A DNA stretch of 64,000 nucleotides from positions 124,001 to 188,000 of IMG/VR virus record IMGVR_UViG_3300044213_000107. One strand, given 5' to 3'. The first letter of the stretch is position 1. Each line of letters begins with the position of its first letter. This document shows, piece by piece, positions 975-52,821 of the stretch. The translations under genes and the position numbers were made by a program. Below the pieces are notes generated by a model, which saw only the letters and a list, made by a program, of their open reading frames with translations, ran no database searches and was not told the origin of the DNA.

Positions 975-2177
975 TTATGTGTAAATTGGTTCAGTTTTAT
1001 ATTTAACTGTTTCAGCAGTTATTTGTATTTTTTTATAGCCGGCTTGTTTAATTTCGGATATTTTATACAAAAATGGTTGTAAAGTTCTCTCTATGATGCT
1101 TTTTAATGCTCTAGCACCTATTTTCATGCTTGCAGCTTCTTCCGCAATGGTTTTTACAGCTTCTGGTGTAAATTCTAATGCAACCGAGTCTGCTTCAAAA
1201 TAAAACTGCATTTGTTTAATTAAATTGTTTTTTGGTTTAATCAGTATACTAACAAAATCATCTAGAGTTAATTTATTTACAGAAACCAAAACAGGAAATC
1301 TACCTACAAATTCAGGAATCATTCCATACTGTATAAAATCTTCCCAGTCAGCGGTGTCAGAAGTTTTTATGTTATTAGTAGTTGATCTAAACCCTATGCC
1401 GGTTCCGCGGCATCGTTGTTCTATAATTCGATCTAGATCACTAAATGCTCCACTGGCTATAAACAGTATGTTTGTTGTATCTATATCAATTTGGTCCAAG
1501 CTAGGATGTTTTTTGTTATTGCCAATTGGTACTCTGCATACTGTACCTTCAACTAGTTTTAATAGTGCCTGTTGTACACCCTCACCACTAACATCTCGAG
1601 TAATACTAGGCCCTTCGCTTTTACGGCCAATTTTATCTATTTCATCTAAAAATACAATTCCGCGTTGGCATGCTTCTACATCGTAATCTGCTTCAGCAAA
1701 TAAACGAGCAATCATGGTATCTACATCATCGCCAACATACCCCGACTCGGTTAATGTTGTTGCATCGGCAATAACAAACGGTACATTCAAGTATCGTGCA
1801 ATAGTTCGTGCTAATAATGTTTTCCCTGATCCAGTTGAACCAAATAACAATATATTACTTTTTTCTAATTCTACACGACTGTTAAAAAATACACGTTTAT
1901 AATGATTTGTGACCCCGACACTCAATGCTATTTTTGCAGCATCTTGGCCAATTACGTATAAATCTAAAAACTGTTTTATCTTAACAGGATCTAATGCTCG
2001 GTTTATTTTTTTGTCTGCTCTAAAGGTATCGTTGCGTTCTTTGTTTAATATCCCAGAACACAAATCTATACATTCATCGCAAATACCTGCATCGTTGGCA
2101 ACAATAAGTTTGTTTACATCGTTACGGGTTTTACCGCAAAAATTACAATGTATCAGCAGCGTGTTGTTGTCTTTCAT
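975..2177 (-). CDS. clpX: ATP-dependent Clp protease ATP-binding subunit ClpX
   Basis: C4 zinc domain (CNFC...CDEC), Walker A GSTGSGKT, GYVG pore loop, DEID, RDVSGEGVQQ, IGF loop, GARAL. Confidence 0.95.
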   Translation of the reverse strand: MKDNNTLLIHCNFCGKTRNDVNKLIVANDAGICDECIDLCSGILNKERNDTFRADKKINRALDPVKIKQFLDLYVIGQDAAKIALSVGVTNHYKRVFFNSRVELEKSNILLFGSTGSGKTLLARTIARYLNVPFVIADATTLTESGYVGDDVDTMIARLFAEADYDVEACQRGIVFLDEIDKIGRKSEGPSITRDVSGEGVQQALLKLVEGTVCRVPIGNNKKHPSLDQIDIDTTNILFIASGAFSDLDRIIEQRCRGTGIGFRSTTNNIKTSDTADWEDFIQYGMIPEFVGRFPVLVSVNKLTLDDFVSILIKPKNNLIKQMQFYFEADSVALEFTPEAVKTIAEEAASMKIGARALKSIIERTLQPFLYKISEIKQAGYKKIQITAETVKYKTEPIYT

Positions 2178-10627: not shown

Positions 10628-10657
10628 ATTGTGTTCCTTTTTGTTTACTATGTGTTT

Positions 10658-10686
10658 ATTATACTAAAATGGGTGTTTTTGGTCAA
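10658..10686 (-). promoter_or_regulatory. Sigma70-type early promoter
   Basis: TTGACC-17 nt-TATAAT. Confidence 0.85.
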
Positions 10687-10703
10687 CCAAACGGTGTTGT
10701 ATT

Positions 10704-11018
10704 TTAGTGACTGTTCAACGCAGGGTTAAATCCATTGATTAACTCACGCTCTACGGCATGTGCGGGTTTGCGTCCACGCACAATGTCAACTAAAAGTACC
10801 GCAAAAGCTTCTGCACCATGCTCACGAATACTGCGGCATAAAGCCCACGATTTGTTTTCAGTTACTGCACGACGAACGTGCTTTTGAAAACGAACTTTTA
10901 GAGCTTTATTGATTTGTGCACCGCATACAGTAATACCAATATAACTTTCGTTAGTGTTAGTGTTCACTAACATGTATACTGCATGTTTTGTATCTTGGCG
11001 TCTTTTGCGTTTTATCAT
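10704..11018 (-). CDS. Small GIY-YIG nuclease-domain protein
   Basis: AVYML...YIGIT...RFQKH...E motif order; TATAAT 6 nt upstream of the ATG (leaderless). Confidence 0.75.
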   Translation of the reverse strand: MIKRKRRQDTKHAVYMLVNTNTNESYIGITVCGAQINKALKVRFQKHVRRAVTENKSWALCRSIREHGAEAFAVLLVDIVRGRKPAHAVERELINGFNPALNSH

Positions 11019-11053
11019 GTATTAATTATAACAGATTTTGGGCTCAAAAACGC

Positions 11054-11080
11054 AAAAACCCGCCAAAAAAGCGGGTTTTT
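11054..11080 (-). terminator. Intrinsic terminator
   Basis: aaaaacccgc-loop-gcgggttttt. Confidence 0.75.
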
Positions 11081-11120
11081 GTGGTAAAAATACTACAAAA
11101 AATGTAGTACTTTAGTACTA

Positions 11121-11252
11121 CTATCTTACAGTTTCTGTGTGTTTGTGTTTAATACTTTTTTTGAGTATTTTGAACCAGAATTTCTTCACACGTTCCATGT
11201 TGTGATCAAACTCGGCTCTATTCAGTTTCTGTATTAATTTTTTAAGTTTCAT
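11121..11252 (-). CDS. Small basic protein (43 aa), not in the ORF track
   Basis: MKLKKLIQKLNRAEFDHNMERVKKFWFKILKKSIKHKHTETVR with an AGGAA RBS. Confidence 0.55.
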   Translation of the reverse strand: MKLKKLIQKLNRAEFDHNMERVKKFWFKILKKSIKHKHTETVR

Positions 11253-45117: not shown

Positions 45118-46149
45118 TTATACTTTCATACAGGTTGTTTGAGCCATTAGTTTCCATTTAATTGGAAAGCTCTTACGCAATTGTGCAACCTTGATTGCCA
45201 TGCGCAAACTCATTTCACGCAATTTATTTTGATTGACTTCCATAAACTCAATCACTTCATCTTGTGCAATCTGCTCTAGGTCCATGTCTGCAAACAATGC
45301 ACCGTCTTGCGCAATCTGCTTGATACGCAAAATCTTATCACGCATTGTATCCAATGTCAAATCAAGATAGTGACAACGGCTTTGTAACGCATCTAAATGA
45401 TCACGAAGTTTTTGACTCTTGAGTCCATCAAACTTGAGATTAGTGATAAAAATCACACTTCCTTTAAACTCAAAACTATCAGGGATGCCTTCTCTACGCA
45501 GGGTAGAGCTTTCTGACAACCAACTAATTTTGCGTTTCTTACCAGAGTCCAATGCACCTTTAAGCAAGTTAAGTGACACGTCATCTAATAAAATGCTATC
45601 ACAGTCGTCAAACACAACTACACAATTGGGATCCGAATACTTGTACAAAGTTTGATACAAACCAATCGGTGTAGCACTACCTTTAACAACTTCTGCACGT
45701 AAACGCTTGCCAGCAATTTGGTCAAACAAACATGCTTTCTCGATGATTTGCTCTACACCAAAACTCTTACCTACTCCAGGAGGACCCGACACAATCATAG
45801 CACGAATTTCGCCATTGGTTGCGGCTTTTGTCATTTCGTCTAGGATCTCAAAACGCTCACGGATACGTGCAATAACTTCTTCGTCGGTTTCAACAGGAGC
45901 AGCCGTATGTGTAGGAGCAACTGCGACTGACGCAGGTACATCGGCACCAGCGACAAACTCATAGTCTGCAGGACTAGAAACTTTAACACGAATCTGCTCA
46001 GGAAAGCCCGGAAAGATACCGCCATTCATAACAGTAACATATCCACCTTTGGCAGTAGATTTGTACTGCTCAACAAGTTGGAATACTAACCCGGAAACAT
46101 CTGTTGTGCGATATGCACCTGAAGTAATACGAATAAATGCGTTTGACAT
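45118..46149 (-). CDS. AAA-family ATPase
   Basis: SGPPGVGKS, VFDDCD, FITN, ALQSR; start reset to MSNAF (AGGAG RBS). Confidence 0.88.
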   Translation of the reverse strand: MSNAFIRITSGAYRTTDVSGLVFQLVEQYKSTAKGGYVTVMNGGIFPGFPEQIRVKVSSPADYEFVAGADVPASVAVAPTHTAAPVETDEEVIARIRERFEILDEMTKAATNGEIRAMIVSGPPGVGKSFGVEQIIEKACLFDQIAGKRLRAEVVKGSATPIGLYQTLYKYSDPNCVVVFDDCDSILLDDVSLNLLKGALDSGKKRKISWLSESSTLRREGIPDSFEFKGSVIFITNLKFDGLKSQKLRDHLDALQSRCHYLDLTLDTMRDKILRIKQIAQDGALFADMDLEQIAQDEVIEFMEVNQNKLREMSLRMAIKVAQLRKSFPIKWKLMAQTTCMKV

Positions 46150-46242
46150 TTCAGCTCCTGTTTTGTTTAATATGTGTATATTATAACATGATTTAAAAAC
46201 CCGAGCAAGCATCGGGTTTTTGAGTGTTGCATTTTTGCAACA
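46150..46242 (-). promoter_or_regulatory. Early regulatory cassette, copy A (palindrome, terminator, sigma70 promoter, leader)
   Basis: TGTTG-N8-CAACA 46225-46242; hairpin 46195-46221; TTGCTC-17-TATAAT. Confidence 0.85.
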
Positions 46243-46455
46243 TTATTTTTCTGTGGGTTTTTCAGTTTCTAGCGTAAAAAGTACCAATTTGTAAAGGTAA
46301 AAAATAACCAGGCCCAGAAAAAAATTGTTTACAAGGTGGTGCATTGTTTCCGGGGAAACATTATCCGTTATAAAATTAAGAATGTATGCTACCGCTGTAA
46401 GTAGAATTAACATTCCTGCAGTGATAATTGCGGCTTTAAGTTTAAGGTTTCTCAT
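46243..46455 (-). CDS. Small 2-TM membrane protein
   Basis: Two hydrophobic helices; GGAG RBS; TTGCCC-17-TATAAT promoter upstream. Confidence 0.7.
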   Translation of the reverse strand: MRNLKLKAAIITAGMLILLTAVAYILNFITDNVSPETMHHLVNNFFLGLVIFYLYKLVLFTLETEKPTEK

Positions 46456-46530
46456 GTGGTTCTCCAAAGTTAAGTATGATTTAATTCCTGTACGTGTATT
46501 ATAGCAAAATGCCCATTGCAGGGCAAATTG

Positions 46531-46911
46531 TTATACTTCTAAGTTGTAGTCTTTTCGCAACACTTCTAGGCATTGCTCGCGGGTGCGCTTGGTTACAACA
46601 ACTTTTCCACCAAAAAATCCCACGTAAAGATTACGGTGCTCAACAAACTTCACTTCGCCATCTGCGCCTGTGTGTTTTTGACGCACAGGCGCTTTTTTGA
46701 CTGCAGCTTTGGCTTGTGGGATTTTTGCAACTTTTTCCATGGGTTTGGAAGGTAATACTTTGGTATTAGTTTTTGTTTCAGTTTTGAACCCGTGTTTTTT
46801 GTCGTACTTGGCAATAAATGCTTCGTCTTTGCCCCATGTTGCCAAAAGACGACGAACTTCAGTACCGGGCAGTTGATTCCAATGAATAACAGGGTCTGTC
46901 CAATTTGTCAT
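46531..46911 (-). CDS. Basic early protein
   Basis: 126 aa with a strong RBS and promoter. Confidence 0.75.
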   Translation of the reverse strand: MTNWTDPVIHWNQLPGTEVRRLLATWGKDEAFIAKYDKKHGFKTETKTNTKVLPSKPMEKVAKIPQAKAAVKKAPVRQKHTGADGEVKFVEHRNLYVGFFGGKVVVTKRTREQCLEVLRKDYNLEV

Positions 46912-47004
46912 TTAGGGCTCCTTTTTGTTTCGTATGTGTGTATTATAGCACCAGAAAGAAACCCGCACAATCTGCGGGTTTTTGAGTGTTGTTTTTAGAC
47001 AACA
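46912..47004 (-). promoter_or_regulatory. Early regulatory cassette, copy B
   Basis: TGTTG-N8-CAACA 46987-47004; hairpin; TTGTGC-17-TATAAT. Confidence 0.85.
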
Positions 47005-47005
47005 A

Positions 47006-47227
47006 TTAAAATTTGTTATCCATGTCTATTTTATAGACTTTGGCTAACGCGGCCGTTAACTGTCGATAATTTTCTTGAGCCGCTCGATACCCATCGTCGT
47101 ATCCTTCTTGGTATCGTGGGTCAGTGGTTAATTTTTCCTCGTCTTCGTTTAGACTTCGAAGTAGTGCACGGAGTTGTCCTGCTCCGCCTCGAGGCATTTG
47201 TGGAAAATTATTACTATCAAGGGACAT
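47006..47227 (-). CDS. Hypothetical protein
   Basis: 73 aa with an AGGAG RBS. Confidence 0.65.
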   Translation of the reverse strand: MSLDSNNFPQMPRGGAGQLRALLRSLNEDEEKLTTDPRYQEGYDDGYRAAQENYRQLTAALAKVYKIDMDNKF

Positions 47228-47465
47228 TTTTAATCTCCTCTACACGTATGCCTTTCATTATAAGCAGAATGGCTTCTTGCTCATCAACAATGCGTTCCTT
47301 TTGGAATTTTTTAGCATTTAAAATAATTACACGGTGAGTGATATCTCCGTTAATGTCCGTTTCTTTTTTGTGAACAATAAAACGTTCTTCATTGTCGTGT
47401 TTTATTTCACAATCGGGGTCATTACGGTATCGATTCCTGTCATCAACAACTCGATATTGTTTCAT
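47217..47465 (-). CDS. Hypothetical protein
   Basis: Start reset to MKQYR (AAAGGA RBS). Confidence 0.6.
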   Translation of the reverse strand: MKQYRVVDDRNRYRNDPDCEIKHDNEERFIVHKKETDINGDITHRVIILNAKKFQKERIVDEQEAILLIMKGIRVEEIKNVP

Positions 47466-47489
47466 TTTGAAACATCCTTTTATAAATGT

Positions 47490-47635
47490 TGCTGATTTGC
47501 CGTTGATCTTGTACCGGCCTATCCGGCCAAGACCTACCATTGATACGATCGCTGGACTCGCTGTATGTTCGCATCTGACATTGCATCAGGGGCCAGCGAG
47601 TGACTCCAATCAGCCTGGAGTTATTTGTATTATTT
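47490..47635. ncRNA. Candidate structured RNA in a GC-richer intergenic gap
   Basis: ctcgctg/cagcgag stem enclosing atg-ttcg-cat and ctga-cattgca-tcag hairpins; flanking hairpins. Confidence 0.35.
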
Positions 47636-47645
47636 GCTACTTTTA

Positions 47646-48374
47646 TCAGGTATTTGATTGAACCTGTGGGGCAACGATTGTTTTATCTTTTCGTTTAGTG
47701 CCCGGTCTTTGGAATTTTTTGGGCTTACTGGTTTTGATTTCATTTTCGAGTCCTTCTCCTGTAAATACAGATAGATTTGGTTTAAGTTTTTCTTTAGGTT
47801 TTTTTGGCTCTGCCGAAGTTATCTTGTTAATAATAACTCCAAGTTTCTTAAGAGTTGCGGTTAATTCCTTTTCTCTTAATTTCTTCTTTTCTTCTTTTAA
47901 TCGTTTTTCTTTTGCTTTTGTTTCTTTTTTTCTTCTTCTTTCTTCTTTTAATTTTCGTTTTTTGTCCATTTGATTAAACTTATAATCAAATTTTAATGCA
48001 TCAGCACAGTATATATTCTGTTCTACAATCGGGCGTAAATCTTCTCTACCACATAGCAATCGTTCTCTGCATAAGTCCACATTGTCCTGCATAAGGTCAA
48101 CACCGTAGATGGTAGATAATGCTTCTTCAAAGGTAGCACCATTCTCCATTTTACGGATTAACACTTCGCCAAGGAACTGTCCATCACCACAACTAGGATC
48201 TAAATATGTTTTTGTAGAATCTGTAAACAATTCAGTAGGTAATTGATCTAATATTTCTTGCACAAGCAGAGTGGGGGTAAAGACTTCTCCTGTTGCCTTT
48301 ACCCTTGTTTGTTCTCGCTCAACACCGCCCATGTAAGTGCGATTGCGGATATAGTCAATTACCTTACTTAACAT
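47646..48374 (-). CDS. N6-adenine DNA methyltransferase SAM-binding half with a Lys-rich tail
   Basis: RVKATGEVFTP (motif X), LDPSCGDGQF (motif I), YGVD, ADAL; no NPPY. Confidence 0.8.
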   Translation of the reverse strand: MLSKVIDYIRNRTYMGGVEREQTRVKATGEVFTPTLLVQEILDQLPTELFTDSTKTYLDPSCGDGQFLGEVLIRKMENGATFEEALSTIYGVDLMQDNVDLCRERLLCGREDLRPIVEQNIYCADALKFDYKFNQMDKKRKLKEERRRKKETKAKEKRLKEEKKKLREKELTATLKKLGVIINKITSAEPKKPKEKLKPNLSVFTGEGLENEIKTSKPKKFQRPGTKRKDKTIVAPQVQSNT

Positions 48375-51300
48375 TTGCTTCAATGTAATCAATTTCTTCT
48401 TGTGTTAGGCCAAAGTGAGTATATAGTTCTGCGTCAGTCCAGATCTTACTAGCGAGTTTAGGCAATGATGACAACACTTTTCCATTAAGGAAACCGCTCC
48501 ATTTACCTGTGTTTACGACAAATTTGTAAAGTTTGCTATTAAGATAACTTAGAATATGTTGCGATTCTGCTGAGTTTGTTAAAATATATTGGCATACTTC
48601 TGAGGTTCCTAGATGGCCTTCACTATAGAAAGGTTTAAAATAACCACTTGTAGTCCAAATAATCTTAGACTTTAAAAAGTCTTTTGATTGTTTTTTACAA
48701 AATTTTGTTTGAGCATTAGTATGGAATGTTTCATACTTGTAAGTCGAGTCTTTAGTGTCAGAAAAATTCTTATGCTTATGGTCGCTATGGCACGATGTAT
48801 CGCAAAGAATATCTAACTTGGAGTGAGCTGAGTTAATTACTTTATCATGTATAGGAAATGTTTTAGAGAAATTTCTCGGAAGATATTGGAGTTTAGCAAG
48901 GTCAACTTCTAGTCCGTCAATTAATGCCGTTGAGGTATTCTTATTTTTTTGCATAACCCATGCTGTAAAACTACTACCAACTGTAAAATATTTTCCAACT
49001 TCAGTATCGACCCAAATCAAAGAGTTATCTTTAAACATTTTAAGGACTTGACTGTTTGGGCTCATCCAACTGTCGGGGGTAACAAATGCAATATACCCAT
49101 TTGTGTTGAGTAGTTCGACCCCTTTGTCAACAAACTTACTCCACAAATTATGACTCTTGGGTTGTTTTGTCCCCTTGTCATTGTTACCTTGATAAGGAGG
49201 ATTACCTACTACTACATCAAATTTCATATCAAACTCCAATTCTGTAAAATCGCCTTTCACTACTGTGATGCTAGGGTATTTGCGTTTAATCTGATTGCAG
49301 AAAAAACTGTATTTGTCATTATACACAATCTTGTCTACAATATCAACGCCAAACATATCCACAAGCACGTCAATCTCCGATCCGTGACCACCGGCCGCTA
49401 CAAGTATCTTTTTGCAATGTTTACTTTTAATAAAACGCTTTAGTTCTTTATTATCAAAAATATCAAACCAAAGTTTAGTATCATCTTTAAGAATGGCCAA
49501 GGCATTATTCTCAATATGCTTCTGTTTATTATTATATTTACTCATCCGCACAATCATATCCAGAGTAGAAATTTCTAGTCTAGGTGACAGTCGTTTGATA
49601 GACGCAGGCTTAATTCCGTAAAGTTCTGCAAACTCTCTGCTCATTTCTGCATCAGCATCAATGATGTCCACACACTCAAGGAAACTCTCACCTTGATAAT
49701 TACTCAAAGCCAAGACAGTTGTGGCACTTCCGTTGATCATACGGATTGCTTTTTCTACGATTGCTTTAAGAGGATTTTTTTTTGGACGGCCCGATGCTGT
49801 ATTGCCCGAATCAAAAGTCTTGCCAGTGGCAACGACTTTGTCAATTTTAGATTTCTCTGCCTTGCTTCCAGATGATCGTTTAGCCAATTCGCTAAGGTCT
49901 TCTATCTCTTCCGAAGTCAAATCTTCAATAGTAAGACGAGTATGTGCATTAGCAATTTCTAACAGTTTATTGTTGTCTTCAAACTGATTAATAACTTCTT
50001 CAGCATCAATCCATTGCCCGGAAATCATGTCCTTGATGTTGACGCTATTCATTACTGTCCGTACAGCATCAGGGTAGGTCATACCCTTTTGCCGAATTAG
50101 CAATGCCGCTTCTACTGCTACGCTCATAACAGTATTACGAGTCTTACTTTGATCAAATGCAAAGTCAAAGATGTGACCAAACTTCTTGCCAAAGCCAGGT
50201 GTAAGGCAACGGCTATATTTTTGCATGTAAGGATAGACATCGCCGCCTTCTTGCATAAACAAACAGGCTTGGATCTCAGGAATACTATAACTACGAGTAC
50301 CCATCATATTAGTAATCACTAACAGTTTATCACGTCCCGGATAGTATCCGTTTTGCAAACGCACCAATTCTTCTTTGGTAAGACCTTCGGCTTCTTTGTT
50401 ATCTGTATAATCGCCGTTAAGAATCAACACCTTGTGTTCTGCACAATGCTTCTCAATGATTTCTGCCAAAGCCTCCATTGCCTTTTTAGAGATGTTAACA
50501 AACAACATAAGATTGTTAATAATCTCACCTGCGGCTTGGCTCAGGTTCATTCCGTAGATAGGCTGATACCCTAACAAGTCTTGGAAAACTGCGGCAATAA
50601 ATTTTTCTTGCGAACGAGCCTTTTCGAGGATTTTATTAATGTTTGGCAACACATCCTTGTCAAAGTCTTCCAATAGTTTGTTCATCTTTGGATTAAACAA
50701 CATATTGTAGAATCGACGCACTACTACATTAGGAATGCTCGGATCTTGTTCTACCATACAGTAAGGAACACTAATAATTTCGTCAATGGCATTCTTACCA
50801 AATGCCTTTGCTAGTCGACCAATATTAGTACCACTAGCATTGATCCGTGTTACAGTCTTGTTTGCTAGAATGTATTCAACTTTTTCGACTTGGCTGTCAG
50901 TATGAGTACCAAAGTCTGTTTCCTCTAGCAAGGCAATATGGGTGCCTTGTAGTTGATTAATCCATTCATATTTTTCTTCTACTTCGGGGTTAAGGCTGAT
51001 AAACACAACGGGCATCTTACCATCTGCGATAGCCTGTTGATACTGTTGTTCTGCGTCCGATTCAGCGGCATCGATAAATGTCACGTCAGCGAAGTCAACG
51101 TATTTAGAAACTTCGTCTTTGTATGATGTTTTAACACTAAGACCGACACCGTAGGCCATGATAAACATAGACTCGTGGCCAAATTCTTCTCGCATGTTTT
51201 TTGCAAGAGACAGGAACAAGATAGTTTTACCAATTCGGGCAGCAAGTTCGCAGACAAAATTAGTTACAACTCCATTTTGTCGAAGAGCAGACAATACCTT

Positions 51301-51786
51301 TTTAATAACAAGAATCTGAATATCTCGTAAATTTACAGCCTGCTTTTCATGATCGGGGTTAAGTTTTGCGGCACACCTGCGGATTTTCTCATTGAGCCAA
51401 ACACGTATGGGTTCAAAATCTTTTGACTTAACAAAATCCTCAATAAAATATTTTTCTACTGCAATCTTAAACAATTCTGAATGGCGATTAGAATCAGGGC
51501 GAGGCAATTGAGCGGCAATAGATTGACGAACTATTTCATGCAAAGCATGATCACGATATCCGGGTTCAGGAATCGTATCTAGCAAATACTTTTGCCAAGA
51601 AACATTTTTAGAACTAGAAAGACTTAATTGTCGTTCGGCAATAGTGCCTTCAACTGTATCACCGATACCAAACTGTAAGAAACCAGTAGACACCATCGCG
51701 TCAATCCAAGTTTCTTCAGTCATTACGTAGATACCTGTAGTGTCAGTTGCAAGACCAAATTCTACAGGACTTTTAACGTAACTCAT
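48364..51786 (-). CDS. SF2-helicase-like plus N6-adenine methyltransferase plus target-recognition fusion (Type IIG/ISP-like)
   Basis: AARIGKT, LLEETD, MQKYSR; VKGDF, DVVVGNPPY; Eco57I-like C-terminus ending FGLTQEEIDYI; start reset to MSYVK. Confidence 0.8.
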   Translation of the reverse strand: MSYVKSPVEFGLATDTTGIYVMTEETWIDAMVSTGFLQFGIGDTVEGTIAERQLSLSSSKNVSWQKYLLDTIPEPGYRDHALHEIVRQSIAAQLPRPDSNRHSELFKIAVEKYFIEDFVKSKDFEPIRVWLNEKIRRCAAKLNPDHEKQAVNLRDIQILVIKKVLSALRQNGVVTNFVCELAARIGKTILFLSLAKNMREEFGHESMFIMAYGVGLSVKTSYKDEVSKYVDFADVTFIDAAESDAEQQYQQAIADGKMPVVFISLNPEVEEKYEWINQLQGTHIALLEETDFGTHTDSQVEKVEYILANKTVTRINASGTNIGRLAKAFGKNAIDEIISVPYCMVEQDPSIPNVVVRRFYNMLFNPKMNKLLEDFDKDVLPNINKILEKARSQEKFIAAVFQDLLGYQPIYGMNLSQAAGEIINNLMLFVNISKKAMEALAEIIEKHCAEHKVLILNGDYTDNKEAEGLTKEELVRLQNGYYPGRDKLLVITNMMGTRSYSIPEIQACLFMQEGGDVYPYMQKYSRCLTPGFGKKFGHIFDFAFDQSKTRNTVMSVAVEAALLIRQKGMTYPDAVRTVMNSVNIKDMISGQWIDAEEVINQFEDNNKLLEIANAHTRLTIEDLTSEEIEDLSELAKRSSGSKAEKSKIDKVVATGKTFDSGNTASGRPKKNPLKAIVEKAIRMINGSATTVLALSNYQGESFLECVDIIDADAEMSREFAELYGIKPASIKRLSPRLEISTLDMIVRMSKYNNKQKHIENNALAILKDDTKLWFDIFDNKELKRFIKSKHCKKILVAAGGHGSEIDVLVDMFGVDIVDKIVYNDKYSFFCNQIKRKYPSITVVKGDFTELEFDMKFDVVVGNPPYQGNNDKGTKQPKSHNLWSKFVDKGVELLNTNGYIAFVTPDSWMSPNSQVLKMFKDNSLIWVDTEVGKYFTVGSSFTAWVMQKNKNTSTALIDGLEVDLAKLQYLPRNFSKTFPIHDKVINSAHSKLDILCDTSCHSDHKHKNFSDTKDSTYKYETFHTNAQTKFCKKQSKDFLKSKIIWTTSGYFKPFYSEGHLGTSEVCQYILTNSAESQHILSYLNSKLYKFVVNTGKWSGFLNGKVLSSLPKLASKIWTDAELYTHFGLTQEEIDYIEANVK

Positions 51787-51958
51787 CTTCATCTCCAAAA
51801 TCTGCAGAATCAATTTGATCTTGCCAGTATACACGAGCCTCGGCTTCATTGTCAAAGGTTTCCAACACCTTCATTCCACCAAGAGGATGCGGAAACCACA
51901 CCAAGAATTTTCCGCTGTCCTCATCTTGTGTACAGTACAATTCTACCGGTTCGTTCAT
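51773..51958 (-). CDS. Small acidic early protein
   Basis: 61 aa directly downstream of a consensus promoter. Confidence 0.65.
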   Translation of the reverse strand: MNEPVELYCTQDEDSGKFLVWFPHPLGGMKVLETFDNEAEARVYWQDQIDSADFGDEDELR

Positions 51959-52050
51959 ACAACCACCGCTTTCGTTAATATGTGTATATTATAACACCAA
52001 AAGAAAACCCTGTCAAACACAGGGTTTTTGGGTGTTGTACAAAAACAACA
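51959..52050 (-). promoter_or_regulatory. Early regulatory cassette, copy C
   Basis: TGTTG-N8-CAACA 52033-52050; hairpin; perfect TTGACA-17-TATAAT. Confidence 0.9.
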
Positions 52051-52821
52051 CTAGAAATACTGGCAATTTGTGCGTGGAAAAAAGCACTCATTTTGGCGCA
52101 AAGGCTTTCCCTTCCAAGTTTCGCAAATTGCGGCTTTTCCAAGTCCCATGGCCAAACTATAAACAAAATTTTGATTTGCCATTACCAAATTTGCACCTGC
52201 AACAATGCCAGCAAGTTCTAAAAAGTCTGCTACCGGGCGATACTCAATCGCCACACCCACGGTCTGGACAAACTCTGCATGCTCGGCCGGGCTGCCTACA
52301 AATATGCCGTTGGCGCCAAGATCACCATCGGCCACAATTTCACGCCATAGAGCATCACCGTTTGGATCTCGATAACGTGCAGTTCTTGAGACCACAATTG
52401 GTTGAGTTTCAATTGGGTCTGCTTCCAACCAAGGTGTATCATAGTCCTGCATGGCAAATGGCAAACCAAAAGTACGGTGATATGCCTCCACATAGTTGCC
52501 TTCAAAGCCTCGCCACAGCACACCTCTAAAACGATCCAGATCCACATCGGGTTCTGACATGCCGGTTCTCCAATCGCCAAAGCTCTGAATATATGATTGT
52601 CGCCGCAACAAAGGTACTAACTGATAGTAATCTTGTTCTGTGAGACGTCCTCGATGTGCTGGATCAACTTCGTCGGGACGATATCCATACTGGCTTACAC
52701 AATTTTCAATGTTGTTTAATGCCACTAGAAACATGGCATTGTTTTCTGCTGCCATTTTTTTTACTACAGAGAGAGAATAAATCAAGTCTCCCAAGGTTCC
52801 TGAGTGCCGATAAGTTGTCAT
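52051..52821 (-). CDS. GT9 (heptosyltransferase)-like glycosyltransferase
   Basis: HSGTLGDLIYSL, DFLELAGIVAGANLVMANQ..YSLA.GLGK; start reset (ATGA overlap). Confidence 0.6.
   Translation of the reverse strand: MTTYRHSGTLGDLIYSLSVVKKMAAENNAMFLVALNNIENCVSQYGYRPDEVDPAHRGRLTEQDYYQLVPLLRRQSYIQSFGDWRTGMSEPDVDLDRFRGVLWRGFEGNYVEAYHRTFGLPFAMQDYDTPWLEADPIETQPIVVSRTARYRDPNGDALWREIVADGDLGANGIFVGSPAEHAEFVQTVGVAIEYRPVADFLELAGIVAGANLVMANQNFVYSLAMGLGKAAICETWKGKPLRQNECFFPRTNCQYF

What the first reader, a model, noticed from the sequence alone, without database searches (positions are those of the whole stretch)
46150..52050. Repeated ~93-bp regulatory cassette: palindrome, terminator hairpin carrying the -35, -10, conserved leader
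Seen in three copies (46150-46242, 46912-47004, 51959-52050). Each starts at or within 1 nt of the upstream stop codon: TGTTG-N8-CAACA, then exactly 16 nt, then a -35 inside the loop or 3' arm of an AAAAACCC...GGGTTT hairpin, 17 nt, TATAAT, and an ACACAUA...AA leader to the RBS. Degenerate versions lie at 10628-10703, 11019-11120 and 46456-46530. The palindrome centre is near -61. Known: that is the class I activator position (CRP at lac), and promoter-early stem-loop cassettes were described in T4-type phages as mediating module shuffling. Inference: an unidentified dimeric regulator controls a regulon that includes the RM-like enzyme and the ATPase, and the cassettes double as recombination points.
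Basis: partly seen in the sequence, partly recalled or inferred. Interest (0 to 1): 0.65.

Follow-up and report, generated by a model that had tools for sequence, protein, structure and literature searches.

The report
Operator-bearing terminator-promoter cassettes, T4-like phage
The three repeats are real: they are compact terminator-plus-early-promoter units of an uncultured freshwater T4-like giant phage, each preceded by an 18-bp two-half-site binding site that recurs throughout this phage family and probably lets one small phage protein control a handful of early genes.

Summary
On the minus strand, three ~93-nt cassettes start 0-1 nt after the upstream stop codon. Each has TGTTG-N8-CAACA, 16 nt, a -35 inside an A5CCC...GGGT5 hairpin, 17 nt, TATAAT, and an ACACATA leader.

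The host record is a 260.7-kb, ~74%-complete IMG/VR contig of a T4-like jumbo phage from freshwater. The hairpin-promoter-leader part matches the known PeSL cassettes of T4-like phages.

The palindrome is the new part:
- It occurs 12 times in the genome (≤1 expected), 8 of them 29-52 nt upstream of TATAAT promoters.
- It precedes near-consensus σ70 promoters in >119 related viral contigs.
- It behaves as two half-sites (TGTKGY), not as a stem.
- It is kept at orthologous promoters.

The "exact 16 nt" spacing is not conserved. Gaps to the -35 peak at 9-10, 19-20, 29-30 and 39-40 nt, a ~10-bp phasing replicated in an independent set. This implies face-specific action on RNA polymerase.

The best candidate binder is a conserved 90-aa winged-helix protein that is predicted to form a homodimer and usually sits next to such a site. 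This link is circumstantial, and the direction of control (activation or shut-off) is unresolved.

Gene order breaks at the cassettes, which fits module shuffling but does not prove it.

The parts
46150..46242 (-). Cassette 1: operator, terminator hairpin, promoter and leader in front of the AAA ATPase gene
46225..46242 (.). Operator palindrome TGTTGCAAAAATGCAACA, immediately after stop codon TAA 46243-46245
46195..46221 (-). Terminator-like hairpin AAAAACCCG..CGGGTTTTT (-11.8 kcal/mol); holds the -35 TTGCTC at 46203-46208
46180..46185 (-). -10 TATAAT preceded by TGT (extended -10); conserved leader 46150-46179; ATG 46147-46149
45118..46149 (-). AAA ATPase gene (phrog_1250) driven by cassette 1. 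Orthologues in 34 related loci keep the palindrome, but 46 nt from the -10 instead of 39
46912..47004 (-). Cassette 2, in front of the 126-aa gene (46531-46911)
46987..47004 (.). Operator palindrome TGTTGTCTAAAAACAACA, 1 nt after stop codon TAA 47006-47008
46959..46981 (-). Terminator-like hairpin (-14.1 kcal/mol) holding the -35 TTGTGC at 46965-46970; -10 TATAAT at 46942-46947
51959..52050 (-). Cassette 3, in front of a 61-aa ORF and the RM-like operon
52033..52050 (.). Operator palindrome TGTTGTTTTTGTACAACA, immediately after stop codon TAG 52051-52053
52004..52028 (-). Terminator-like hairpin (-13.9 kcal/mol) holding the -35 TTGACA at 52011-52016; -10 TATAAT at 51988-51993 (12/12 consensus plus TG)
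47006..51958 (-). Module between cassettes 3 and 2: 61-aa ORF, 1163-aa Eco57I-type methyltransferase-domain protein, 248-aa N6-methylase-like protein, and 107-aa and 73-aa ORFs. No homologue in any of 119 related loci
46498..46562 (-). Degenerate cassette: one-mismatch palindrome at 46545-46562, small hairpin at 46510-46525, TTGCCC-17-TATAAT, in front of a 70-aa membrane-like ORF
10658..10712 (-). Degenerate copy: one half-site (ACAACAC), 8 nt, TTGACC-17-TATAAT, conserved leader
11025..11121 (-). Degenerate copy: AT-rich palindrome at 11104-11121, two-mismatch site at 11080-11097, hairpin at 11056-11079, TATAAT at 11025-11030, then the ATG of a GIY-YIG gene 7 nt later

Best explanation
The cassettes are PeSL-type composite units of a T4-like jumbo phage. 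An intrinsic terminator ends the upstream transcript. It overlaps a strong host-σ70 early promoter, and a conserved unstructured leader leads to the ribosome-binding site.

In front of a subset of these promoters sits an 18-bp operator made of two inverted half-sites (TGTKGY-N6-RCMACA, with an A/T-rich centre). I infer that a phage-encoded dimeric DNA-binding protein occupies it. The best candidate is the conserved 90-aa winged-helix (HTH_39) protein at genome 82358-82630, which lies outside the window.

From a preferred face of the helix upstream of the -35, this protein would modulate RNA polymerase at 5-12 early promoters per genome. Because the promoters are already near-consensus, I lean towards timing or shut-off control (roughly 55:45) over activation.

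Each module carries its own terminator, promoter and operator. Genes flanked by cassettes can therefore move or be acquired while staying inside the phage's programme.

Shown here: the sequence anatomy, the family-wide conservation, the half-site behaviour, the phasing and the synteny breaks. Inferred: protein binding, the binder's identity, the direction of control and recombination at the cassettes.

T4-like identity:
- A Gp23 capsid protein is present at E=2e-99.
- A T4-type portal is present in the complete 364-kb relative.

PeSL definition:
- PMC2839356 and PMC4122927.

Family-wide conservation:
- More than 119 viral contigs have the palindrome 26-55 nt upstream of TATAAT-NN-ACACAT.
- Palindromes not selected by that pattern also lie 28-65 nt upstream of promoters in 43 of 47 cases.
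- Orthologous genes keep the site while the spacing drifts.

Half-site behaviour:
- Inner-base combinations TT/CT/CC are 30/32/7 against 30.7/30.7/7.7 expected.
- Mixed TGTTG/TGTGG sites and one-sided mismatches occur.

Phasing:
- 95 clusters give R=0.39 at a 10.5-11 bp period, p<0.0005.
- An independent set of 41 clusters gives a period of 10 bp, R=0.32, p~0.02.

Candidate protein:
- It is the only hit among five DNA-binding Pfam families tested.
- It has a winged-helix model with pLDDT 81.5.
- Homodimer score is 0.75 against a best control of 0.00. That mark was reached by 20 of 30 proteins solved as pairs of one chain and 1 of 23 solved as single chains. The runs agree in 100% of contacts and partner pLDDT is at least 91. 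My own alignment was used, so these counts hold only roughly.
- It is single-copy in 8 of 10 large palindrome-bearing records.
- In loci chosen by the protein alone, 61 of 79 hold the exact palindrome (0 in shuffles). 34 of 75 have it within 150 nt after the gene's stop, and many others have the TGTGGC variant there.
- In G001 7 of 7 sites, and in G002 5 of 6, lie within 10 kb of the gene.

Synteny breaks at the cassette.
Against: - No binding, expression or transcript-end data exist. No RNA run holds the region.
- Co-occurrence of the protein and the site is confounded by shared ancestry, because all carriers are relatives.
- The protein's recognition helix is invariant and both half-site variants occur in the same loci, so no specificity covariation could be shown.
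- In G000 the winged-helix gene is not next to a site and its own promoter lacks one.
- G000's own 16-nt class lies off the family's preferred phase, and orthologous promoters differ by 5 or 7 nt. The phasing is therefore a preference, not a rule.
- In the larger set the two half-sites share the same variant more often than expected. In some relatives the palindrome is extended and followed by a T-run, so an RNA-hairpin role in some copies is not excluded.
- The record is only ~74% complete, so other regulators may be missing.
Confidence: 0.5

Rival explanations
1. A dimeric class I-type activator binds at a fixed position near -61 (exactly 16 nt from the -35) and recruits RNA polymerase through the alpha C-terminal domain, turning the regulon on.
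For: - Five G000 copies share the 16-nt gap, including one without the hairpin (genome 75456).
- The family-level ~10-bp phasing fits contact with polymerase from upstream.
- G000's own -35 hexamers at these promoters are often imperfect (TTGCTC, TTGTGC, TTGCCC).
Against: - The spacing is 6, 8 and 29 nt at other G000 copies.
- Orthologous promoters differ by 1-21 nt.
- The preferred family gaps put the centre near -53.5, -64, -74 and -84.5, not -61.
- The promoters are near-consensus, with TTGACA in 104 of 115 and an extended -10 in half.
- The site is 2 bp wider than a CRP site.
Confidence: 0.17
2. The palindrome works as a nucleic-acid hairpin and not as a protein site. It would be a 3'-end stabiliser, a processing site or an auxiliary terminator for the upstream gene, sitting next to the promoter only because the intergenic space is minimal.
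For: - It starts 0-1 nt after the stop codon.
- It folds at -4.5 to -8.2 kcal/mol.
- In relatives it can be extended (GGTGTTGTA-GAAA-TACAACACC) and followed by a T-run.
- There is an excess of same-variant half-sites in the large set.
Against: - C·A and G·A combinations occur at roughly the frequency expected for independent half-sites.
- Degenerate copies carry uncompensated one-sided changes.
- The centre is conserved as an A/T tract.
- Four G000 copies have a separate, much stronger terminator directly behind the palindrome.
- Its distance to the -35 is phased, which an RNA element of the upstream transcript would not need.
Confidence: 0.13
3. The site is bound by a host transcription factor or nucleoid protein, which the phage uses to couple a subset of early genes to host physiology.
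For: - The promoters use host σ70.
- No phage binder is proven.
- The TGT-N12-ACA geometry is shared with several bacterial and phage factor sites (P2 Ogr sites, PMC3931495; TyrR boxes from my own knowledge).
Against: - Of 120 bacterial genome hits to the consensus 18-mer, only one had a promoter context like the phage's, and no genome showed a regulon-like cluster.
- The site is invariant across phages that differ by 30-50% in protein sequence and probably infect different hosts.
- The sites cluster beside a phage DNA-binding gene.
Confidence: 0.12
4. The palindrome is primarily a recombination or mobility signal, for example the target of a site-specific enzyme or of the GIY-YIG endonucleases nearby, and only secondarily transcriptional.
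For: - GIY-YIG genes are the second most frequent neighbours (29 loci).
- Gene order breaks at the cassettes.
- The RM module is unique to this genome and is flanked by cassettes.
Against: - Most sites have no endonuclease gene nearby.
- Phasing with the -35 has no role in this model.
- Cassette identity is only 69-81%, with exact runs of 17-26 nt.
- No joints at cassettes were seen in contigs of other samples, although those contigs were too short to tell.
Confidence: 0.05

Closest known systems
PeSL (promoter-early stem-loop) cassettes of T4-like phages (RB49/phi1, nt-1/KVP40, PST/T4; PMC2839356, PMC4122927)
   Same: [quoted passage not shown]
- It holds a near-consensus σ70 promoter and a stem-loop terminator that overlaps the promoter.
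- The nt-1 type A3-4G3-loop-C3T3-4 is like A5CCC-loop-GGGT5 here.
- It ends with a Shine-Dalgarno sequence and start codon.
- There are many copies flanking small unknown or variable genes in a T4-like genome, with gene-order breaks at the units.
   Different: - PeSLs are described with only an AT-rich stretch upstream of the -35. No conserved dyad operator is reported.
- Here the stem-loop carries the -35, where PeSL stem-loops mostly lie between -35 and -10 or over the -10.
- Copy-to-copy identity (69-81%) may be lower.
- Recombination and mini-circles were shown for RB49/phi1 but not here.
P2 Ogr / P4 Delta-dependent late promoters (TGT-N12-ACA; PMC3931495)
   Same: An 18-bp dyad with TGT and ACA at the outer positions lies upstream of the -35 region of a set of phage promoters and is read by a small phage protein.
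   Different: - No Ogr/Delta zinc-finger gene is present in the record.
- The promoters here have consensus -35 boxes and are early-type, not late.
- The position is variable in ~10-bp steps, not fixed.
Class I CRP-dependent promoters (lac, centre -61.5)
   Same: A dimer site lies upstream of the -35, the G000 copies are centred at about -60.5, and there is periodic position dependence.
   Different: - The half-sites and their spacing differ (TGTKG-N8-CMACA against TGTGA-N6-TCACA).
- The promoter is not weak.
- The preferred centres are near -53.5, -64, -74 and -84.5.
Phage phi29 protein p4 (my own knowledge, not tested here)
   Same: A small phage dimer binds an inverted repeat upstream of strong early promoters and contacts the polymerase alpha subunit. 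It represses strong promoters and activates a weak one from the same kind of site.
   Different: The protein fold and the site are unrelated, the host is Gram-positive, and nothing was tested here.

Membership tests
PeSL cassettes | [quoted passage not shown] | tested here: met
   92-93 nt; starts 0-1 nt after the stop and ends at the ATG
PeSL cassettes | Strong σ70-like early promoter | tested here: met
   By sequence only: TTGNNN-17-TATAAT, with TG extended -10 in all three; copy 3 matches 12/12. Activity was not tested
PeSL cassettes | Stable stem-loop able to terminate, overlapping or adjacent to the promoter | tested here: met
   -11.8 to -14.1 kcal/mol, U-rich tails, overlaps the -35. 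Termination was not tested
PeSL cassettes | Carried by a T4-like phage, in many copies flanking variable genes | tested here: met
   Gp23 capsid; 11-12 promoters of this family in G000; variable neighbours
PeSL cassettes | Recombination between copies (indels, mini-circles) | tested here: inconclusive
   Synteny breaks at the cassette, but contigs of other samples were too short to show joints, and close relatives are withheld from the searches
Class I activator-dependent promoter | Activator site at a fixed helical phase near -61.5 or whole turns further upstream | tested here: inconclusive
   G000 centre is -60.5 in 5 copies, but others lie at -50.5, -53.5 and -73.5. Family peaks are at -53.5, -64, -74 and -84.5
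Class I activator-dependent promoter | Core promoter too weak to work alone | tested here: not met
   TTGACA in 104 of 115 related promoters, TATAAT, and extended -10 in half
P2 Ogr/Delta late promoters | TGT-N12-ACA dyad upstream of the promoter | tested here: met
   TGTTG-N8-CAACA has this geometry
P2 Ogr/Delta late promoters | Ogr/Delta zinc-finger activator encoded by the phage | tested here: not met
   PF04606 has no match at E<=1 in the record, which is 74% complete
HTH_39 winged-helix proteins (candidate binder) | Pfam PF14090 match above the curated cut-off, and a winged-helix fold | tested here: met
   25.8 bits against a cut-off of 21.3; model topology H-H-H-β-β-H, pLDDT 81.5
HTH_39 winged-helix proteins (candidate binder) | Binds the TGTKGY operator | not testable with these tools
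   Only circumstantial evidence: adjacency, co-occurrence and a predicted homodimer

The most novel reading that the evidence does not exclude
T4-like jumbo phages of fresh water, which seem to lack AsiA and MotA, use a small winged-helix dimer and a portable 18-bp operator to time a subset of their σ70 early promoters. The operator travels with the terminator-promoter cassette, so any gene captured between two cassettes is wired at once into the phage's temporal programme. This would be a previously undescribed layer of early-gene control in T4-type phages.
Probability: 0.3. Interest if true: 0.7.

Novelty: new variant of a known kind. Interest (0 to 1): 0.55.

Why it matters
Early transcription of T4-type phages is thought to rest on promoter strength, chemical modification of RNA polymerase, and sigma appropriation by AsiA and MotA. 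Operator-bound regulators of early promoters are not part of that picture.

A conserved, helically phased operator at 5-12 early promoters per genome would add such a layer. It occurs in hundreds of uncultured freshwater T4-like contigs and has a plausible small binder.

It would also give a concrete, testable example of mobile regulatory cassettes that carry their own control site. The regulon includes a large methyltransferase-type (RM- or BREX-like) protein and a widely conserved AAA ATPase, so it may bear on when phages deploy DNA-modification or anti-defence functions.

Tried and rejected
Searches that found nothing useful:
- Megablast of the region against GenBank phages found no match.
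- An 86-nt cassette against the same collection gave only chance-level partial hits.
- The Pfam families Ogr_Delta, HTH_3, Sigma70_r4 and RHH_1 are absent from the record.
- AsiA and MotA_activ are absent from four records, but these families had no positive control.
- No RNA run holds the region.
- A sequence search of solved structures with the winged-helix protein found nothing significant.
- Foldseek gave only weak generic winged-helix matches, E≥7e-3.

Tests that led nowhere:
- The consensus 18-mer in bacterial genomes gave 120+ hits in mixed taxa, with only one in a promoter context like the phage's. This gives no host or host-regulon lead.
- Contigs of four freshwater runs were laid on the region. 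They are short pieces of the same or similar phages and show no joints at the cassettes. Loose ends pile up at the multi-copy leader and -10 core.
- Covariation between the winged-helix recognition helix and the half-site variant was uninformative, because the helix is invariant and both variants occur within single loci.
- The distant homologue in Pelagibacter phage HTVC008M has no such site nearby.
- The genes downstream of palindrome promoters across the family include no DNA-binding protein, so there is no sign of autoregulation.

Candidates considered and set aside on geometry, from my own knowledge and not tested:
- CRP and NtcA sites (TGT-N10-ACA).
- LexA boxes.
- parS (TGTT-N8-AACA).
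- TyrR boxes.
- CytR, Fis and IHF sites.
Full report
**What is there**

Genes in this part of the window run on the minus strand.
- The upstream gene's stop codon comes first. After 0, 1 or 0 nt comes TGTTG-N8-CAACA (46225-46242, 46987-47004, 52033-52050).
- 16 nt follow, including AAAAACCC.
- A -35 hexamer (TTGCTC, TTGTGC, TTGACA) lies in the loop or 3' arm of an A5CCC...GGGT5 hairpin.
- After 17 nt, a TG-extended TATAAT follows.
- A leader ATACACATA..AAACAAAA-GGAG follows, then the ATG.

The hairpins fold at -11.8 to -14.1 kcal/mol and have U-rich tails. An independent terminator scan finds them on both strands. The exact palindrome occurs 5 times in the window against 0.16 expected.

The three "degenerate" copies exist but are heterogeneous:
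- One keeps a single half-site.
- One uses a different AT-rich palindrome and has no -35.

**Whose genome this is**

The window lies in a 260,723-bp IMG/VR viral contig (GC 38.5%, linear, about 74% complete).
- It encodes a T4-type Gp23 capsid protein (E=2e-99).
- The window also holds ribonucleotide reductase, a DnaB-type helicase, a primase and a ClpX-like ATPase.
- A complete relative of 364,404 bp with terminal repeats has a T4-type portal.
- No GenBank phage is close. The best protein identities are about 40%.
- The DNA is found only in freshwater (and, as small shares, wastewater) metagenome runs from several studies.

It is therefore an uncultured T4-like jumbo phage from fresh water.

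**The known part**

The segment from the hairpin to the start codon matches PeSLs. PeSLs are the composite early-promoter and stem-loop terminator cassettes of T4-like phages. They run from stop codon to ATG over about 100 nt, flank variable genes and mediate module shuffling. The nt-1 type stem-loop, A3-4G3-loop-C3T3-4, is very like the one here (PMC2839356, PMC4122927). G000 has 11-12 promoters of this family with the same leader.

**The new part: the palindrome**

Genome-wide there are 12 exact copies against at most 1 expected. Eight lie 29-52 nt upstream of a TTG..-N17/18-TATAAT promoter, and one more lies 80 nt upstream.

A pattern that left the distance free (26-55 nt) found the same arrangement in more than 119 other viral contigs of 5-364 kb. 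In those loci, palindromes that the pattern did not select also sit 28-65 nt upstream of promoters in 43 of 47 unique cases.

Orthologous genes keep the site while everything around it drifts. Distances from the palindrome to the -10:
- AAA ATPase: 39 nt here, 46 nt in relatives.
- 126-aa gene: 39 against 34.
- 73-aa gene: 39 against 35 or 40.
- 103-aa gene: 52 against 31 or 42.

The site is therefore under selection, but its exact position is not.

**Protein site or stem?**

Evidence for a protein site:
- Among 77 unique 18-mers, the base next to the core is T or C in each half independently. TT/CT/CC counts are 30/32/7 against 30.7/30.7/7.7 expected.
- TGTTGC...ACAACA, which would give a C·A mismatch in a stem, is as common as chance predicts.
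- A second half-site form, TGTGGC, appears in relatives and mixes freely with TGTTGY in one site.
- Weakened copies in G000 carry one-sided, uncompensated changes.
- The centre is a conserved A/T tract.

In the larger, non-dereplicated set the two halves do share a variant more often than expected. That may reflect lineage or a secondary hairpin role. In some relatives the palindrome is extended and followed by a T-run.

On balance it is a dimer-binding operator, TGTKGY-N6-RCMACA.

**Spacing**

The 16-nt gap holds for five G000 copies, one of them without the hairpin. Other G000 copies have gaps of 6, 8 and 29 nt.

Across 95 sequence clusters, the gap to the -35 peaks at 6-10 (maximum at 9), 19-20, 29-30 and 39-42 nt. 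The periodicity is significant at about 10.5-11 bp (R=0.39, p<0.0005 against a ±5 nt jitter null). An independent set of 25 loci was chosen through a protein, not through the motif, and shares no 60-mer with the first set. It reproduces peaks at 9-10, 19-20, 29-30 and 39-40 nt (period 10, R=0.32, p~0.02).

This is the signature of a factor that must face RNA polymerase. The preferred centres are about -53.5, -64, -74 and -84.5. G000's -60.5 class lies between these phases. Homologous hairpin cassettes in relatives have gaps of 14 and 17 nt (L024 and L057). The exact 16 nt is therefore best read as shared descent of copied cassettes.

**Activator or repressor?**

In related loci, 104 of 115 early-type promoters have a perfect TTGACA and half have an extended -10. 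Only about a quarter carry the operator. Such promoters should not need recruitment help, so I lean slightly towards timing or shut-off control. Phage phi29 p4 is a precedent from my own knowledge. Activation cannot be excluded, and G000's own operator promoters have weaker -35 boxes.

**Who binds?**

Of five DNA-binding Pfam families searched in the record, only HTH_39 hit. It matched a 90-aa protein at genome 82358-82630. The evidence for this protein as the binder is:
- It is the most conserved small protein near these promoters (17 loci, median 69% identity).
- It models as a winged helix (pLDDT 81.5). Its nearest structures are ArsR/MarR-type dimers and the viral factor Stf76, at weak scores.
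- It passes a homodimer prediction through its C-terminal helix. The score is 0.75 against a best control of 0.00. That mark was reached by 20 of 30 proteins solved as pairs of one chain and 1 of 23 solved as single chains. The runs agree in 100% of contacts and partner pLDDT is at least 91. My own alignment was used, so these counts hold only roughly.
- It is single-copy in 8 of 10 large palindrome-bearing records. The two without it are 36-44% complete fragments.
- 454 viral contigs encode a relative. In the best 80 loci, 61 of 79 hold the exact palindrome (0 in shuffles).
- In most of those loci an operator-promoter follows the gene within about 100 nt.
- In two large relatives nearly all sites lie within 10 kb of the gene.

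Weaknesses:
- All carriers are kin, so co-occurrence is confounded by shared ancestry.
- The recognition helix is invariant, so no covariation with the site could be shown.
- In G000 the gene is not next to a site, and its own promoter is of another type.
- The distant homologue in Pelagibacter phage HTVC008M has no such site.

I put the identity of the binder at roughly 35-40%.

**Recombination**

The helicase-ATPase block is conserved at 68-77% identity in relatives. The gene upstream of the ATPase's cassette differs from genome to genome, and its homologues lie 95-115 kb away in G000.

The 126-aa gene sits beside a GIY-YIG gene in other genomes. The 5-kb RM-like module between cassettes 3 and 2 has no homologue in any of the 119 related loci.

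This fits cassette-bounded modules, but several points limit the conclusion:
- The cassettes share only 69-81% identity, with exact runs of 17-26 nt.
- The module's GC content is ordinary.
- Contigs from other samples were too short to show joints.

Recombination at the cassettes therefore remains an inference.

**Verdict**

This is a real, non-random feature. It is a new variant of a known kind: PeSL cassettes with an added, family-wide, helically phased operator. The mechanism is inferred, not shown.

Noticed in passing
window 10704-11030 (-); also L009, L020, L028, L044, L074, L112, L066, L079: The GIY-YIG homing-endonuclease-like gene starts at an ATG only 7 nt after TATAAT, with no Shine-Dalgarno sequence. 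It is a candidate leaderless mRNA, and homologues across the family have the same layout.
   Followed up: partly
window 11104-11121; genome 80116 and 75116 promoters; L009, L020, L028, L021, L119: A second AT-rich palindrome family (GTAGTAC-N4-GTACTAC, or GTACTACTTTT..AAAAGTAGTAC) is followed by a T-run. These are probably AT-rich terminator hairpins and often lie directly upstream of the TGTTG operator.
   Followed up: partly
L253-L324, between the winged-helix gene's stop and the next operator: A highly conserved ~20-nt element CCGATTCGCTCCCGGGGCG, set inside a larger inverted repeat, occurs in many relatives but not in G000. Its function is unknown.
   Followed up: no
genome 82631-82700 (outside the window) and orthologues in L038, L050, L055, L071: The winged-helix gene has its own promoter type (TTGCAT / TATACT-like) and a conserved leader hairpin GCTGT-N-ACAGC. 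This suggests separate, possibly post-transcriptional, control.
   Followed up: partly
window 51773-51958 and 48364-51855 (-): The 61-aa ORF behind cassette 3 overlaps the 1163-aa Eco57I-type methyltransferase-domain ORF by 83 nt in another frame, and the large ORF has only a TTG start. The true start, or a frameshift, is unresolved.
   Followed up: no
genome 55659-55694 (outside the window): Two overlapping operator-like palindromes lie in tandem (TGTTGCAGATTTACAACA and TGTTGTTTTTAGACTACA) inside or at the end of a coding region, about 110 nt upstream of a TAGACA-17-TATAAT promoter.
   Followed up: no
window 46664-46692 (+): A strong 13-bp hairpin followed by a T-run lies on the strand opposite the 126-aa gene. 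It is a possible terminator for antisense transcription.
   Followed up: no
G000, G001, G003, G005 (whole records): There is no Pfam match to AsiA or MotA in this T4-like lineage, including the complete 364-kb genome. These families also found nothing in the tool's control genomes, so this is weak negative evidence.
   Followed up: partly
NC_020484.1 91433-91768 (L325): The only homologue of the winged-helix protein in an isolated phage is gp110 of Pelagibacter phage HTVC008M (36% identity). It lies beside CobS-type ATPase and peptidase genes, the same neighbourhood as in the freshwater family.
   Followed up: partly
window 975-2177 (-): The phage encodes a ClpX-like AAA+ unfoldase with the C4 zinc finger.
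   Followed up: no
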